Assembly: GCF_006345805.1 (NCBI RefSeq)
Contig: NW_021825013.1
Location: forward strand, 1 to 17,026
DNA length: 17,026 nt
Direction of reading: 5' to 3'
DNA from: Octopus sinensis
Lineage: Eukaryota
Shown in pieces: positions 3,254 to 14,035 of the stretch. Numbering within the stretch: the stretch's first letter is position 1; every line of letters begins with the position of its first letter. The translations under genes were made by a program, and so were the position numbers. Under the pieces are notes generated by a model, which made no database searches, was not told the origin of the DNA, and worked only from the letters and a program-made list of their open reading frames with translations.

Positions 3254-3652
3254 GGTGCAGGAGTGGCTGTGTGGTAAGTAGCTTGCTAACCAACCACATG
3301 GTTCCAGGTTCAGTCCACTGCGTGGCATCTTGGGCAAGTGTCTTCTTCTGCTATAGCCCTGGGCCGACCAATGCCTTGTGAGTGGATTTGGTAGACGGAA
3401 ACTGAAAGAAGCTGTCATATATATATGTATATAATATATATATGTGTGGTGTGTGGTTGTTTTCCCCCTAGCATTACTTGACAACCGTGCTGGTGTGTTT
3501 ATGTCCCTGTAACTTAGCAGTTCGGCAAAAGAGACCAATAGATTAAGTACTAGGCTTACAAAAATAAGTCCCGGGGTCGATTTGCTCGACTAAAGGCGGT
3601 GCTCCAGCATGGCCGCAGTCAAATGACTGAAACTAGTAAAAGAGTAAAAGAG
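3254..3652 (+). mobile_element. Full-length ~400-bp tRNA-derived SINE, family 1 (CORE-like segment, internal TA/TG tract, agtaaaag tail)
   Basis: ggtgcaggagtggctgtgtggtaag (A box), ggttccaggttcagtcc (B box), cttgggcaagtgtctt, ending gactgaaactagtaaaagagtaaaagag. Collinear with three other long copies in the window. Confidence 0.9.
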
Positions 3653-6252: not shown

Positions 6253-6675
6253 TCTCTTTACTCTCTTTTACTCTTTTACTTGTTTCAGTCATTTGACTGC
6301 GGCCATGCTGGAGCATCGCCTTTAGTCAAGCAAATCGACCCCGGGACTTATTCTTTGTAAGCCCAGTACTTATTCTATCGGTCTCTTTTTGCCGAACCGC
6401 TAAGTGACGGGGACGTAAACACACCAGCATCGGTTGTCAAGCAATGCTAGGGGGACAAACACAGACACACAAACATATACACAACACCTTATACATATAT
6501 ATACATATATACGACGGGCTTCTTTCAGTTTCCGTCTACCAAATCCACTCACAAGGCATTGGTCGGCCCGGGGCTATAGCAGAAGACACTTGCCCAAGAT
6601 GCCACGCTGTGGGACTGAACCCGGAACCATGTGGTTGGTTAGCAAGCTACTTTACCACACAGCCACTCCTGCGCC
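6253..6675 (-). mobile_element. Full-length family-1 SINE, antisense, ending about 165 nt upstream of the NFI exon
   Basis: Reverse complement of the 3254-3652 element; ends ...cttttaccacacagccactcctgcgcc. Confidence 0.92.
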
Positions 6676-6840: not shown

Positions 6841-7216
6841 AATGAAAAACCAGAGATTAAACAGAAGTGGGCTTCAAGGCTATTAGCGAAACTGCGTAAG
6901 GACATAACGCAGGAGTGCCGCGAGGATTTTGTTATGAGTATAACTGGGAAGAGGCCACCAGTTTGCGTTTTGAGCAATCCGGATCAGAAGGGCAAAATGC
7001 GTAGGATAGATTGTCTACGACAAGCCGACAAGGTGTGGCGACTAGACCTTGTCATGGTAATTCTCTTCAAAGCCATACCCTTGGAAAGTACCGACGGCGA
7101 GCGCCTGGAGAAGTCACCCGAGTGTTTGCACCCGTCACTCTGCGTCAACCCACAACACATAAGCGTCTCTGTGAGGGAGTTAGATCTTTACCTGGCGAAT
7201 TTCATACACAGCTATG
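6841..7216 (+). CDS. NFI: Internal coding exon of Nuclear Factor I (CTF/NFI DNA-binding and dimerisation domain, MH1-like fold)
   Basis: Translates [125 protein letters not shown] plus 1 nt. It aligns without gaps to the vertebrate NFI domain as recalled ([20 protein letters not shown]...ELDLYLAYFVHAA). Bounded by poly-pyrimidine...TTCCAG (6840) and G|GTGAGT (7217). The flanks of track ORF 6685-7344 are intronic read-through. Confidence 0.97.
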
Positions 7217-7254: not shown

Positions 7255-7454
7255 CTCTTTTACTTCTTTCAGTCATGTGACTGTGGCCATGCAGGAGCAC
7301 CGCCTTTAGTCGAGCAAATCGACCGCAGAACTTATTCTTTGTAAGCCTAGTACTTATTTTATCGGTCTCTTTTTTTGCCGAACCGTTAAGTTACAGGAAC
7401 GTAAACACACCACCATCGGTTGTCAAGTGATGTTGGGGGGACAAACACAGACAA

Positions 7455-7485
<31 letters not shown>

Positions 7486-7648
7486 CATATATATATACAT
7501 CAGGCTTCTTTCAGTTTCCGTCTACCAAATCCACTCACAAAGCTTTGGTCAGCCCGAGGCTATAATAGAAGACACTTACTCAAGGTGCCACGCAGTGGGA
7601 CTGAACCCAGAACCATGTGGTTCGTAAGCAAGCTACTTACCACACGCC
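7255..7648 (-). mobile_element. Near full-length family-1 SINE, antisense, starting about 38 nt after the NFI donor
   Basis: Collinear with 6253-6675; small deletion in the tRNA head (cttaccacac|gcc). Confidence 0.9.
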
Positions 7649-7817: not shown

Positions 7818-7902
7818 CTCTCTTTTACTCTTTTACTTGTTTCAGTCATTTGATTGTGGTCATGCTGGAGCACCGCCTTTAGTCAAGCAAATCGACCCTA
7901 GG
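7818..7902 (-). mobile_element. 5'-truncated family-1 SINE (3' ~85 bp only)
   Basis: ctctcttttactcttttacttgtttcagtcatttgattgtggtcatgctggagcaccgcctttagtcaagcaaatcgaccc matches the tail of the other copies. Confidence 0.85.
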
Positions 7903-7939: not shown

Positions 7940-8212
7940 CACACACACACACTCACACTCACACACACACGTGCGCGCACACACACACACACACACACAC
8001 AACACACACACAACACACACACACACAACTCTCACAACACACACACAACACACACACACAACACACACACGAACACACACACACAACACACACACACACA
8101 CACACAACACACACACACAACACACACACACAACACACACACACAACACACACACACAACATACACAACACACACACACACAACACACACACACACACAT
8201 GCACACAACACA
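7940..8212. repeat. (CA)n/(CAA) compound microsatellite
   Basis: Direct reading. Confidence 0.9.
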
Positions 8213-8220
8213 CAGTAGAC

Positions 8221-9367
8221 CAGTGGTTTTCAACCAGGGTTCCGCGGAACCTTAGGGTTCCGCCAGTACAGTCCAGGGGTTCCGCAAGAAGTTACAAAAC
8301 TGCTAAAATCGACAGTAATTTTTAATTCTCCTGTGCAGATATGTGTGCATAAGACTATCAAATTTTTGCACAGGGGTTCCTCAAGCCAGTGGAATGTTTC
8401 TTTGGGGTACCGCTCCAGCAAAAAGATTGAAAAGCACTTGTCTAACTAGTGTCTAACTGACTGTGTCTAACTCAGTGGTTTTCAACCAGGGTTCCGCCAG
8501 CACAGTCCAGGGGTTCCACAAGAAGTTACAAAACTGCTAAAATCGGCAGTAATTTTTAATTCTCCTGTGCAGATATGTGTGCATAAGACTATTAAATTAT
8601 TGCACAGGGGTTCCTCGAGCCAGTGGAATGTTTCTTTGGGGTTCCGCTCCAGCAAAAAGATTGAAAAGCACTGGTCTAACTAGTGTCTAACTGACTGTGT
8701 CTAACTCAGTGGTTTTCAACCAGGGTTCCGCCAGCACAGTCCAGGGGTTCCACAAGAAGTTACAAAACTGCTAAATGCGGCAGTAATTTTAAATTCTCCT
8801 GTGCAGATATGTGTGCATAAGACTATTAAATTATTGCACAGGGGTTCCTCGAGCCAGTGGAATGTTTCTTTGGGGTTCCGCTCCAGCAAAAAGATTGAAA
8901 AGCACTGGTCTAATAGTGTCTAACTGACTGTGTCTAATCAGTGGTTTTCAACCAGGGTCCGCCAGCACAGTCCAGGGGTTCCACAAGAAGTTACAAAACT
9001 GCTAAATGTGGCAGTAATTTTAAATTCTCCTGTGCAGATATGTGTGATAAGACTATTAAATTATTGCACAGGGGTTCTCGAGCCAGTGGAATGTTTCTTT
9101 GGGGTTCCGCTCCAGCAAAAAGATTGAAAAGCACTGGTCTAACTAGGTCTAACTGACTGTGTCTAACTCAGTGGTTTTCAACCAGGGTTCCGCCAGCACA
9201 GTCCAGGGGTTCCACAAGAAGTTACAAAACTGCTAAATGCGGCAGTAATTAAATTCTCCTGTGCAGATATGTGTGCATAAGACTATTAAATTATTGCACA
9301 GGGGTTCCTCGAGCCAGTGGAATGTTTCCTTGGGGTTCCGCTCCAGCAAAAAGTTGGAAAAGCACTG
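8221..9367. mobile_element. Tandem array of five hAT (Charlie-like) MITE copies: 8221-8439, 8473-8673, 8707-8907, 8939-9136, 9169-9367
   Basis: Each unit starts CAGTGGTTTTCAACC and ends (GATT/TTG)GAAAAGCACT(G/T), whose reverse complement is CAGTGCTTTTCAATC. Subterminal GGGTTCC motifs; period about 234 bp; identical 8-mer CAGTAGAC at 8213-8220 and 9368-9375. Confidence 0.9.
8440..8472. repeat. Inter-MITE spacer GTCTAACT-AGT-GTCTAACT-GACTGT-GTCTAACT (recurs at 8674-8706, 8908-8938, 9137-9168)
   Basis: Direct reading; later copies have 1-2 single-base deletions. Confidence 0.9.
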
Positions 9368-9454
9368 CAGTAGACACATAAGACCATCAAATTTCCAACT
9401 CCGACAATAATGAAGGCGAGGATAACACAGAAAGTACAACCAGAACACAAACAT

Positions 9455-10230
9455 GCATGTGCACACACACATACATACACACACACATATACACACACAC
9501 AACACACACACACACAACGCACACACACACAACACAGCCAACACACACACACAAACACACATACACACACACACAAACATACACACACAACACAGCCAAC
9601 ACACACACACATACACACACACATACATACACATACATACATACACACATACACATACACACAACACACACACAACGCACACACACACAACACACACATA
9701 CACACACACATACACATACACACATACACACACACACAACACAGCCAACACACACACACATACACACACACATACATACACACACATACATACACACATA
9801 CACATACACACAACACACACACAACGCACACACACACAACACACACATACACACACACAGACAATACACACATACACACACACACAACACAGCCAACACA
9901 CACACACATACACCACAACATACATAACACCCACAATACAATCATATACACATACACACAACACACACACAACGCGCACACACACACAACACACACATAC
10001 ACACACACATACACATACACACACACATACACACACACATACATACACACACAACACAGCCAACACACACACACAGCCAACACACACACACAGCCAACAC
10101 ACACACACATACACACACACACAACACAGCCAACACACACACACAGCCAACACACACACACAAACACACATACACACACACATACATACACACATACATA
10201 CACACACACACATACACACACACACACACA
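9455..10230. repeat. (CA)n compound microsatellite with ~150-bp higher-order period
   Basis: Rare CG anchors (caacgc) at 9518, 9676, 9825, 9973; recurrent cacagccaacac. Confidence 0.88.
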
Positions 10231-10454
10231 CTGCTCCTCTTGTGCCTGCTCACGTAATGTTGATGAAACTCCAAATACCTTCAGAATGAAACCCAGCACC
10301 AATTCTGCAAGTGGTAGGAACCAATTTCATCATCTCCGCCGCCGATGCCACCACATCCACATCCACATCCACAGTGATGACGATGACGATAACCACACCA
10401 AAAAAATACAAGCACCTCATATAACAGTATCACAGACATACTACTTCCACCTGC

Positions 10455-11590
10455 ACCACAACCACTACCACCTTTACCGCCACCACCACCACCATCACCA
10501 TCACCATCATCACTTCCACCGCCACCGCCATCACCGCAACCACCACCACCACCATCATCATCATCACCACCACCAAAACCATCATCATCGTCACTCTCAC
10601 TACTGTAACCACCACCACCATCACCACCACCACCACCATCACACCACCAAAACCATCATCATCTCTCTCACCACCATCACCTCCACCACCACCACCATCA
10701 TCATCATCATCGTCACTCTCACTACCGTCACTTCCACCGCCACGACCACCACCATCATCACCAACCACCACAACCACCACAACCACCACCAAAACCATCA
10801 TCGCTCTCACCACCATCACCTTCATCACCACTGCCACCACCACCACCAAAACCATCATCATCGCTCTCACCACCATCACCTCCACCACCACCTTCATTAC
10901 CACTACCACCAAAACCATCATCATCGCTCTCACCACCATCACCTCCACCACCACCTTCATTACCACTACCACCAAAACCATTATCATCGCTCTCACCACC
11001 ATCACCTCCACCACCACCTTCATCACCACTACCACCTCCACCATCATCATCATTCTCACCACCATCACCTCCACCATCACCTTCATCACCACTACCACCT
11101 CCACCATCATCATCACTCTCACCACCATCACCTCCACCACCACCTTCATCACCACTACCACCTCCACCATCATCATCACTCTCACCACCATCACCTCCAC
11201 CACCACCTTCATCACCACTACCACCTCCACCATCATCATCACTCTCACCACCATCACCTCCACCACCACCTTCATCACCACTACCACCTCCACCATCATC
11301 ATCGCTCTCACCACCATCACCTCCACCACCACCTTCATCACCACTACCACCTCCACCATCATCATCACTCTCACCACCATCACCTCCACCACCACCACTC
11401 ATCACCACTACCACCTCCACCATCATCATCGCTCTACCACCATCACCTCCACCACCACCTCATCACCACTACCACCTCCACCATCATCTCGCTCTCACCA
11501 CCATCACCTCCACCACCACCTTCATCACCACTACCACCTCCACCATCATCATCACTCTCACCACCATCCTCACTGCTACCACCACCACCA
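10455..11590. repeat. (CAC/CAT)n tract containing a 63-bp minisatellite (about 10790-11560)
   Basis: tctcacc recurs at 11054, 11117, 11180 (63 bp); ctctcacc at 10864 and 10927; one 60-bp unit at 10804-10863. Confidence 0.92.
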
Positions 11591-11674
11591 CCCACAGACA
11601 TTTCACATTTCAACAGATTCTCTTCTGCCGAAATCTAAGAATTCTTCTCCAGACTTTTTGTGGTTTCTTCTCTC

Positions 11675-12173: not shown

Positions 12174-12576
12174 GTAGGAGTGGCTGTGTGGTAAGTAGCT
12201 TGCTTACCAACCACATGGTTCCGAGTTCAGTCCCACTGCGTGGCACTTGGGCAAGTGTCTTCTACTATAGCCTTGGGCCGACCAAAGCCTTCTGAGTGGA
12301 TTTGGTAGACGGAAACTGTAGGAAGCCCGTCGTATATATGTATGTGTGTGTGTATATGTTTGTGTGTCTGTGGTTGTCCCCCCCAACATCGCTTAACAAC
12401 CGATGCTGGTGTGTTTACGTCCCCCGTCACTTAGTGGTTTGGCAAAAGAAAGAAACTGATAGAATAAATACTAGGCTTACAAAGAATAAGTCCTGGGGTC
12501 GATTTGCTCAACTAAAGGCGGTGCTCCAGCATGGCCGCAGTCAAATGACTGAAACAAGTAAAGTTAAAAGAGTAAA
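12174..12576 (+). mobile_element. Full-length family-1 SINE, sense copy
   Basis: gtaggagtggctgtgtggtaagtagcttgcttacc...gactgaaacaagtaaagttaaaagagtaaa; collinear with 3254-3652. Confidence 0.92.
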
Positions 12577-13202: not shown

Positions 13203-13374
13203 TAATTAATTTAATTCAATCATGAAATTTATATTATCGTTGTTATGTCTTTGTACGAAATAATCATCTGCAAGAATTAAACTTCTTATAAATTTGAACA
13301 ACTTGTTTCCTCCATTCTTAACAAAGTTGTTGGAATTTATGGAACTTTATTCTGTTAGTTCATCAATCATTATA

Positions 13375-14035
13375 TACATGAAGGCTGAGGGTGTCTTGGC
13401 ATCACTCACCAAGTCCTTTGTGAGCCACTCTCCAGCTATCTACCTGCGACCTCAACTGGAATTTGCATCACCGGTCTGGAACCCCTACCTTGCCCAGGAT
13501 ATTAATCGTCTGGAAGCCGTTCAGCGAAGTGCAATCAAGAGAATACCCTCCATCAGGCATTTGCCATATTCTGAATGCCTTACTTCCCTGGGCATGGATA
13601 CATTGAAACTCCAACATCTGGCAGCTGACTTGGCAGACGCCTATAAAATTATTAACCATCTTACAAACAATAACTCTGAGCACCTTTTCAAACTCCACCT
13701 ATCTAACACCCGTGGACATGTTTACAAAGTCAGAAAACAGCACAGCTCCCATGACTTTCAGAAACATTTTTTCCGCTAAAGTTGCTGAAGCATGGAACAA
13801 ACTGCCGGCATCAGTTGTTAGTTATCGGAGCACTGCATCCTTCAAAACTTCCATGCTTCCTGAGATTCGCCAACACTACACCTGATTTTCTCCCCTCCAT
13901 ACACGTGCAAGCATGTATTTGACTCATACATTGTTCGCTTTCCAGACATTTGTACATTACTGCATATGCTTTATACGCACTTTTGACAAGTTGTGGTGCA
14001 CCTGAGCACTGTATACAATAATTTCTTTATATATT
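13375..14035 (+). mobile_element. 5'-truncated, decayed CR1-group LINE (ORF2 C-terminus plus 3' UTR)
   Basis: KAEGVLASLTKSF...LRPQLEFASPVWNPYLAQDINRLEAVQRSAIK...PYSECLTSLG...DLADAYKII...TRGHVYKV...HFF, then a frameshift near 13775 to AKVAEAWNKLPASVV...TGA (13885). Matches the RPxLEY..VW.P / LE.VQR / TRGH / FF..RV...WN.LP signature of CR1/L2-type ORF2 ends. Confidence 0.88.

What the first reader, a model, noticed from the sequence alone, without database searches (positions are those of the whole stretch)
8213..9375. Five-copy hAT MITE multimer carrying one shared 8-bp target-site duplication
Seen: five complete TIR-to-TIR units head to tail, with CAGTAGAC on both outer sides. None of the four internal junctions has that 8-mer; they carry GTCTAACT instead. 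Established: hAT transposases make 8-bp TSDs, and Charlie-type elements prefer sites with a central TA (both 8-mers have one). Inference: a dimer or multimer was assembled at a GTCTAACT site, moved as a composite using its outermost TIRs into CAGTAGAC, and expanded as a ~234-bp repeat. This would be a snapshot of MITE-to-satellite conversion inside an NFI intron.
Basis: partly seen in the sequence, partly recalled or inferred. Interest (0 to 1): 0.75.

Follow-up and report, generated by a model that had tools for sequence, protein, structure and literature searches.

The report
Five-copy transposon array that probably moved whole
Five head-to-tail copies of a tiny hAT-type transposon sit in an intron of an NFI gene, bracketed by a single 8-bp insertion scar, so the block probably jumped in as one piece; it is a tidy example of processes that are already known.

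Summary
Window 8221-9367 contains five complete TIR-to-TIR units of 198-219 bp with a 234-bp period. Four near-identical 31-33 bp junctions separate them. CAGTAGAC lies immediately outside both ends and nowhere else in the 17 kb.

The unit is a SPIN/Charlie-like hAT MITE. Its TIR is CAGTGGTTTTCAACC. Elements with the same ends in more than 100 contigs from other hosts have 8-bp duplications whose consensus is GTCTAGAC. Both 8-mers here score as good target sites (99th and 98th percentile), and neither belongs to the element.

The best reading (about 0.6) is that a multimer formed at a GTCTAACT-rich donor site and was then moved by its outermost ends, as a hAT macrotransposon, into CAGTAGAC. 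It may have grown afterwards.

The decisive tests could not be run, because no available collection holds the host genome (probably an octopus). These are a genome-wide junction census, an empty site in relatives, and spanning reads.

The underlying processes are documented: the hobo tandem array, Ac macrotransposons and MITE-derived satellites. With 4.8 copies, this is not yet a satellite. Interest is moderate to low.

The parts
8213..8220 (.). Left copy of the outer 8-bp target-site duplication, CAGTAGAC.
   Evidence: one of only two occurrences in the window; 99.3th percentile on the family's target-site matrix.
8221..8439 (+). Unit 1, the long (ancestral-type) MITE copy of 219 bp. It carries an extra 18 bp that completes the palindrome GGTTCCGCGGAACC. 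Its last base is mutated (CACTT).
   Evidence: outgroup MITEs L073 and L115 share the 18-bp segment, so units 2-5 carry a deletion between AGGGTTCCGC direct repeats.
8440..8472 (+). Junction 1, 33 bp: GTCTAACT-AGT-GTCTAACT-GACTGT-GTCTAACT.
8473..8673 (+). Unit 2, 201 bp, short form.
   Evidence: It shares three sites with unit 1 against units 3-5.
8674..8706 (+). Junction 2, 33 bp, identical to junction 1.
8707..8907 (+). Unit 3, 201 bp.
8908..8938 (+). Junction 3, 31 bp: the same sequence with two 1-bp deletions.
8939..9136 (+). Unit 4, 198 bp, with three 1-bp deletions.
9137..9168 (+). Junction 4, 32 bp: the same sequence with one 1-bp deletion.
9169..9367 (+). Unit 5, 199 bp, with private changes near its 3' end. 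It supplies the right outer terminus ...AAAGCACTG.
9368..9375 (.). Right copy of the outer 8-bp target-site duplication, CAGTAGAC.
9377..9394 (+). Flanking 18-mer CATAAGACCATCAAATTT, 17/18 identical to unit 1 internal 8348-8365. Unexplained.
   Evidence: 0/5000 shuffles and 0/787 other window 40-mers reach the score.
6841..7216 (+). Context: an NFI (CTF/NF-I) DNA-binding-domain exon. The array lies about 1 kb downstream of its splice donor.
   Evidence: ORF; MH1, E=2e-12; CTF/NF-I proteins, up to 98% identity; splice signals.

Best explanation
The unit is a roughly 200-bp non-autonomous hAT element (MITE) with SPIN/Charlie-like ends. At some other locus, at least two copies came to lie head to tail: a long one like unit 1 and a short one carrying the 18-bp deletion. 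A 33-bp spacer made of three copies of the good target 8-mer GTCTAACT separated them.

A hAT transposase supplied in trans then paired the 5' end of the leftmost copy with the 3' end of the rightmost copy. It excised the block as one macrotransposon and integrated it into CAGTAGAC in the NFI intron, which duplicated that 8-mer.

The block either arrived with five units or grew after arrival on its 234-bp period, by unequal exchange or replication slippage. That would explain the ladder of similarity: unit 1 differs most, then unit 2, and units 3-5 are closest.

Shown: the anatomy, the hAT signature, the quality of both 8-mers as target sites, and the exclusion of in-place dimer formation.

Inferred: the donor site, the composite jump, and the order of growth.
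For: - The array begins exactly at a 5' terminus and ends exactly at a 3' terminus. It is bracketed by identical 8-mers found nowhere else in the window.
- Elements with the same termini in other hosts are bounded by CAGTG...CACTG plus 8-bp duplications. 26 have both ends and a TSD. The 82 distinct 5' flanks give the consensus GTCTAGAC. So neither 8-mer is part of the element.
- CAGTAGAC scores at the 99.3th percentile as a target and GTCTAACT at the 97.6th.
- All four junctions are one sequence, so they descend from a single junction.
- No junction contains CAGTAGAC, so the dimer did not form at this site.
- Unit 1 matches outgroups L073 and L115 in carrying the 18-bp segment. At least two different family members were therefore joined.
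- hAT macrotransposons that excise and reinsert with 8-bp TSDs are documented for Ac/Ds (PMC9910405 and PMC3260210).
- A hAT (hobo) dimer expanded to about 16 tandem copies with one identical junction motif (PMC5932611).
Against: - This is a single locus. No second copy of the junction, no donor site and no empty site was available. The junction is absent from the 120 related loci and from the prokaryotic and viral collections, none of which contain the host.
- The junction is 33 bp with three 8-mers, not the single TSD that simple double insertion predicts. The donor history is therefore more complicated than modelled.
- The 18-mer next to the right TSD resembles the inside of the unit. The model does not explain this, and it hints at an earlier history of the family at this site.
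- Unit 5's outer TIR has 12/15 matches and unit 1's own 3' base is mutated. Present-day mobility is doubtful.
Confidence: 0.6

Rival explanations
1. Solo insertion followed by ectopic repair. One MITE inserted into CAGTAGAC and made the TSD. Later a break inside it was repaired from a junction-bearing array elsewhere in the genome (gene conversion or SDSA with out-of-register annealing), which copied in four extra periods.
For: This gives the same final anatomy. Unit 1 (most of its length) and the 3' end of unit 5 are the divergent parts, while the interior is homogeneous. That is what a resident copy split by an imported tract would look like.
Against: Unit 1 differs from the others right up to its last base (positions 189 and 219), so extra private mutations are needed. 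It still requires a junction-bearing array elsewhere, so the multimer must exist independently. A four-period register shift in a single repair event is less economical than one transposition.
Confidence: 0.15
2. An ordinary copy of an established composite family. MITE-plus-33-bp modules are the normal internal structure of a longer non-autonomous hAT family with variable module number (a tandem-repeat-containing MITE). This locus would then be a routine insertion rather than a rare event.
For: MITEs carrying internal tandem repeats are known, for example Xstir/Xmix and miDNA4 in Xenopus and pearl/CvA in bivalves (PMC9659126). The clean outer TSD fits any ordinary insertion.
Against: The repeated module here is a complete element with both termini, not an internal motif. 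None of 120 related loci in other hosts shows a multimer. Unit 1 and units 2-5 are different family variants.
Confidence: 0.15
3. Assembly artefact. The copy number, or some of the differences between units, is produced by mis-assembly or poor polishing of a repeat.
For: All seven indel-type differences in units 3-5 and junctions 3-4 are deletions. That pattern is typical of unpolished long-read consensus inside repeats.
Against: Every unit also carries its own substitutions, and units 1, 2 and 3-5 form an ordered ladder. This is hard to obtain by collapsing or inflating identical repeats. The array is only 1.15 kb, shorter than ordinary long reads. The neighbouring NFI exon keeps its reading frame.
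Confidence: 0.05
4. Formation in place at this locus. Repeated insertion into the same target here, or rolling-circle or sister-chromatid events acting on a resident solo copy.
For: The right flank 18-mer resembles the unit interior. The reverse complement of the junction aligns weakly with the reconstructed empty site (23/5000 shuffles).
Against: Any in-place dimerisation would leave CAGTAGAC, or flank sequence, in the junctions, and none is there. The similarity between junction and empty site is largely what two good GTCTAGAC-like target sites would share.
Confidence: 0.03

Closest known systems
hobo (hAT) tandem array in Drosophila melanogaster line I03, and TE dimers formed by double insertion (McGurk and Barbash 2018, PMC5932611).
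   Same: Head-to-tail copies of a hAT element with intact termini. One identical junction motif recurs through the array, so all copies descend from a single dimer. Growth is by unequal exchange.
   Different: There the junction is exactly one 8-nt TSD and equals the TSD of the locus where the array sits. Here the junction is 33 bp with three copies of an 8-mer, and the array is bracketed by a different 8-mer, which implies relocation. The unit here is a 200-bp MITE, not a full-length element.
Ac/Ds macrotransposons of maize (Huang and Dooner 2008; Wang et al. 2022; cited in PMC9910405 and PMC3260210).
   Same: Two hAT elements in direct orientation act as one transposon, using the outer 5' and 3' ends. 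Everything between them is carried along and a single 8-bp TSD is made.
   Different: Those cases were shown genetically, with known donor and footprint. Here it is inferred from sequence alone. The cargo here is only more copies of the element plus a 33-bp spacer.
MITE-derived tandem repeats and satellites: Xmix/Xstir and miDNA4 in Xenopus, pearl/CvA and BIV160 in bivalves, and MITE-related satellites in Messor ants (review PMC9659126).
   Same: A non-autonomous DNA transposon supplies the monomer of a tandem array. Arrays can be carried between loci inside TIR-bounded units.
   Different: In those families the repeated piece is usually an internal segment of the MITE, and the mollusc cases are Helitron-related. 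Here the whole TIR-to-TIR element plus a target-site-derived spacer is the monomer, and the array has only 4.8 copies.
SPIN and related Charlie-like hAT MITEs (for example SPIN_NA and hAT-N1_AC in Anolis, PMC3014272 Table 1).
   Same: The TIR CAGTGGTTTTCAACC is close to CAGYGGTTCTCAACCT (14/15). The TSD is 8 bp of type NYYTARRN or NTCTAGAN. The elements are short and non-coding, and the ends are conserved across distant hosts.
   Different: Homology beyond the termini was not tested against SPIN. The host here is an invertebrate, probably a cephalopod.

Membership tests
hAT superfamily, non-autonomous element (MITE) | 8-bp target-site duplication. | tested here: met
   Identical CAGTAGAC on both outer sides. 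26 related elements in other hosts have 8-bp TSDs with at most one mismatch.
hAT superfamily, non-autonomous element (MITE) | Short terminal inverted repeats beginning YARNG. | tested here: met
   CAGTG at the 5' end and CACTG at the 3' end. 13/15 TIR identity in units 2-4, 12/15 in units 1 and 5 and for the outer pair. The YARNG rule is as quoted in PMC3014272.
hAT superfamily, non-autonomous element (MITE) | Small size with no coding capacity. | tested here: met
   Units are 198-219 bp. The longest ORFs are 57-76 aa and have no homologue in 5.8 billion proteins.
hAT superfamily, non-autonomous element (MITE) | Many dispersed copies in the host genome, and a cognate autonomous hAT transposase. 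| not testable with these tools
   No collection available here contains the host genome. The window holds no other copy. Related copies exist in other hosts.
Charlie/SPIN-like hAT group | Target consensus NYYTARRN / NTCTAGAN with a central TA. | tested here: met
   82 flanks of elements with this TIR give GTCTAGAC (T 64/82 and A 62/82 at the centre). CAGTAGAC has a perfect right half-site and GTCTAACT a perfect left half-site, scoring at the 99.3th and 97.6th percentiles.
Charlie/SPIN-like hAT group | TIR sequence CAGYGGTTCTCAACCT. | tested here: met
   CAGTGGTTTTCAACC matches 14 of 15 positions of the published SPIN TIR (PMC3014272 Table 1). Internal or transposase homology was not tested.
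TE tandem array formed by double insertion at one site (McGurk and Barbash model) | The junction is exactly one TSD-length motif between intact termini. | tested here: not met
   The junctions are 31-33 bp and contain three GTCTAACT copies separated by AGT and GACTGT.
TE tandem array formed by double insertion at one site (McGurk and Barbash model) | The junction motif equals the TSD of the locus that holds the array. | tested here: not met
   The outer TSD is CAGTAGAC and the junction 8-mer is GTCTAACT.
TE tandem array formed by double insertion at one site (McGurk and Barbash model) | All junctions are identical, indicating descent from one dimer. | tested here: met
   The four junctions are the same sequence apart from 1-bp deletions.
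hAT macrotransposon (composite transposition) | Two or more elements in direct orientation, bounded by one 5' and one 3' end and by a single 8-bp TSD. | tested here: met
hAT macrotransposon (composite transposition) | The same composite at other loci with other TSDs, a donor-site footprint, or an empty site in relatives. | not testable with these tools
   The host genome and its relatives are absent. The closest NFI loci found (L121-L123) align only over the exon, at 75-76% nucleotide identity.
Satellite DNA | Long homogeneous arrays and high genomic abundance of the monomer. | tested here: not met
   There are 4.8 copies spanning 1.15 kb at this locus. Genome-wide abundance is unknown.

The most novel reading that the evidence does not exclude
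Whole-MITE multimers are mobilised as macrotransposons in a cephalopod genome and seed the same 234-bp array at new loci. This would be a transposase-driven route for spreading a nascent satellite. On this reading the triple GTCTAACT junction records repeated insertion and excision at one hot spot. Its first spacer, AGT, makes the palindrome ACT|AGT that is expected from hairpin opening after hAT excision.
Probability: 0.3. Interest if true: 0.55.

Novelty: new member of a known kind. Interest (0 to 1): 0.35.

Why it matters
How dispersed transposons turn into tandem satellites, and how short arrays of one satellite end up at many loci, is still argued mainly from a few Drosophila, Xenopus and bivalve cases. 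An array whose inner junctions and outer duplication are two different target sites is direct sequence evidence that a multimer can itself be a transposon. A genome-wide census could confirm this by finding the same junction with other outer 8-mers. That would give a simple mechanism for seeding arrays at new sites, here in a cephalopod genome with a SPIN-like hAT family. As a single locus it is a neat illustration, not a new principle.

Tried and rejected
- Finding other copies in the host genome. The TIR 23-mer and the junction 24-mer gave nothing in viral or prokaryotic collections. The single metagenome scan returned 120 loci, but all come from other hosts and share only the MITE.
- Using the MITE's open frames as a protein query, to catch ORF calls on read assemblies of the host. 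There were no hits.
- Reaching an orthologous intron through the NFI exon. The best hits are 98% identical in protein but only 75-76% in DNA, and they align over the exon only. No empty-site test was possible.
- Looking for multimers in the related loci. There are none. An apparent dimer in L059 is one locus seen in two contigs (L008 = L059) and is not a dimer. L012 is not a tandem either.
- Literature search for the TIR, SINE and junction strings. Only the SPIN-type TIR was found.
- Reading units 2-4 as recombinants with a unit-5-like 5' part and a unit-1-like 3' part, as a single unequal crossover in a dimer would give. Only three sites (181, 206, 208) fit and two (189, 219) do not, so this is not decisive.
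- In-place origin. Rejected because the junctions lack CAGTAGAC.
- Vertebrate host, my own first guess. Rejected because the NFI DNA-binding domain is split at a non-vertebrate position and the window is full of a SINE that I recall from octopus. That recollection was not tested.

Full report
**What is there**

- CAGTAGAC occupies 8213-8220 and 9368-9375 and occurs nowhere else on either strand of the 17,026-bp window.
- Between the two copies lie five units, each starting CAGTGGTTTTCAACC and ending AAAGCACT(G/T): 8221-8439 (219 bp), 8473-8673 (201), 8707-8907 (201), 8939-9136 (198) and 9169-9367 (199).
- Four junctions of 33, 33, 31 and 32 bp separate them.
- Tandem Repeats Finder independently reports a 234-bp period, 4.8 copies, 96% matches and score 2046.
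- The array starts exactly at a 5' terminus and stops exactly at a 3' terminus.

Each junction is GTCTAACT-AGT-GTCTAACT-GACTGT-GTCTAACT, so it carries three copies of the 8-mer rather than one.

Unit 1 is a different variant from the rest. It carries 18 extra bases that complete a GGTTCCGCGGAACC palindrome, and it differs from units 2-5 by 8-14 substitutions. Two full-length relatives from other hosts (L073 and L115, 70-81% identical over 194 bp) also carry this segment. The long form is therefore ancestral, and units 2-5 share a deletion between AGGGTTCCGC direct repeats.

The variable sites form a ladder that follows position: unit 1 is most different, then unit 2, and units 3-5 are closest.

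All seven indel-type differences in units 3-5 and junctions 3-4 are deletions. This pattern suggests unpolished long-read consensus rather than biology.

**What kind of element it is**

- The termini are CAGTG...CACTG, which fits the YARNG rule. TIR identity is 13/15.
- No ORF is longer than 76 aa, and none has a homologue.
- The TIR matches the published SPIN hAT TIR CAGYGGTTCTCAACCT at 14 of 15 positions. SPIN's target type is NYYTARRN (PMC3014272 Table 1).
These share only the MITE with the window, so they come from other hosts.
- In 26 of these contigs both ends and an 8-bp duplication can be read.
- The 82 distinct 5' flanks give a palindromic consensus GTCTAGAC, with T in 64/82 and A in 62/82 at the centre.
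- On that matrix CAGTAGAC scores at the 99.3th percentile of all 8-mers and GTCTAACT at the 97.6th. Each has one perfect half-site.

Neither 8-mer is therefore part of the element, and both look like real integration sites of this family.

**Host and context**

An NFI (CTF/NF-I) DNA-binding-domain exon lies at 6841-7216 on the + strand, with an AG acceptor and a GTGAGT donor. The array sits about 1 kb downstream of the donor, and (CA)n tracts run on both sides of it. Since the DNA-binding domain is N-terminal, an intronic position is very likely.

The host is not a vertebrate. The domain is split at a non-vertebrate position, and the best protein hits are invertebrate. The window contains five copies of a roughly 390-bp SINE that I recall as the abundant octopus SINE. 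That recollection could not be tested. Octopus genomes are reported to hold hAT and MITE families with recent insertions (PMC13282606).

**How it most likely arose**

In-place dimer formation is excluded. Any second insertion or sister-chromatid event at this site would leave CAGTAGAC or flank sequence in the junctions, and none is there.

The four junctions are one sequence, so the array descends from one junction. This parallels the hobo array of Drosophila line I03 (PMC5932611).

The junction is built from a good target 8-mer that differs from the outer duplication. The economical reading is that at least two family members, a long one and a short one, became linked at a GTCTAACT-rich donor site. 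A hAT transposase then used the outermost 5' and 3' ends to move the block into CAGTAGAC. Such macrotransposition is documented for Ac/Ds, including excision and reinsertion with 8-bp duplications (PMC9910405 and PMC3260210).

The positional ladder of differences suggests stepwise growth on the 234-bp period. Whether that growth happened before or after arrival cannot be told. I put this explanation at about 0.6.

**The junction itself**

Simple double insertion predicts one 8-mer, and the observed three do not fit it. Two readings are open.
- The donor site already carried a short tandem repeat of GTCTAACT, and two copies inserted 25 bp apart. This is plausible in a window that is about half microsatellite.
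- The same growing target was reused in repeated cycles of insertion and excision. The first spacer, AGT, forms a perfect palindrome with the preceding ACT. That is what hairpin opening on flanking DNA produces after hAT excision, according to the established mechanism for Hermes and Ac. The chance of this is only 1 in 64, and the second spacer, GACTGT, does not fit the pattern.

Both readings are inference.

**Rivals**

- A solo insertion later extended by ectopic repair from a junction-bearing array elsewhere gives the same anatomy. It also fits the divergence of unit 1 and of the 3' end of unit 5. It needs extra private mutations and still presupposes multimers elsewhere (0.15).
- The multimer may simply be the normal form of an established composite family (0.15).
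- Copy number or small differences may be assembly artefacts (0.05). Unit-specific substitutions argue against collapse or inflation.

**Unexplained**

One base after the right duplication, 9377-9394 (CATAAGACCATCAAATTT) matches the inside of unit 1 at 17 of 18 positions.
- No shuffle (0/5000), no other window 40-mer (0/787) and no site in 611 kb of related loci comes close.
- The matching segment lies in the roughly 23 nt that the outgroup MITEs lack.

It could be a relic of an older copy, filler DNA captured during gap repair, or chance. It needs the family consensus from the host genome.

A weaker similarity between the reverse complement of the junction and the reconstructed empty site is mostly what two GTCTAGAC-like sites would share.

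**What could not be done**

None of the collections holds them.

**Verdict**

The feature is real and cleanly built, and the composite-transposition reading is the best available but rests on one locus. The component processes are all known: TE dimers that expand, hAT macrotransposons and MITE-derived tandem repeats. I file it as a new member of a known kind, with moderate to low interest. Calling a 4.8-copy array a satellite in the making is premature.

Noticed in passing
window 9377-9394 versus 8348-8365: The 18-mer lying one base beyond the right TSD is 17/18 identical to an internal segment of unit 1. That segment falls in the roughly 23 nt missing from outgroup MITEs L073 and L115. The match is statistically unusual (0/5000 shuffles) and unexplained.
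   Followed up: partly
window 3269-3644(-), 6271-6660(+), 7255-7645(+), 7828-7897(+), 12186-12562(-): Five copies, 85-91% identical, of a roughly 390-bp SINE with an internal microsatellite. From memory it matches the abundant octopus SINE, which suggests a cephalopod host. A literature string search found nothing.
   Followed up: partly
window 6841-7216 (+): An NFI DNA-binding-domain exon whose 5' boundary splits the domain at a position not used in vertebrates. The closest database proteins are 98% identical, but the DNA is only about 76% identical, so no close relative is in the collections.
   Followed up: yes
window 10747-11568: A 63-bp CAC-rich minisatellite, 13 copies at 93% identity, inside a longer (CAC)n tract. 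It creates a long His-rich pseudo-ORF (9410-11638).
   Followed up: no
window 13264-13776 (+): An ORF fragment resembling the C-terminal end of a non-LTR retrotransposon reverse transcriptase (motifs such as ...SPVWNPYL...LEAVQR...). It has no Pfam hit at E<=0.01.
   Followed up: partly
loci L001-L120 (metagenome contigs): The first 65 bp of unit 1 (TIR plus palindrome) are 80-93% identical to elements in more than 100 contigs from other, unidentified hosts. The elements there are 194-744 bp long. Such conservation of the ends across hosts is typical of SPIN-like hATs known for horizontal transfer.
   Followed up: partly
window 8939-9168 and 8908-8938, 9195-9200: All indel differences among units 3-5 and their junctions are deletions of 1-2 bp, several of them in short homopolymers. 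They may be consensus errors from long-read assembly inside the repeat.
   Followed up: no
window 7940-8214 and 9462-10231: The array plus 86 bp of unique sequence is embedded between two large imperfect (CA)n tracts. About half of the whole window is microsatellite.
   Followed up: no
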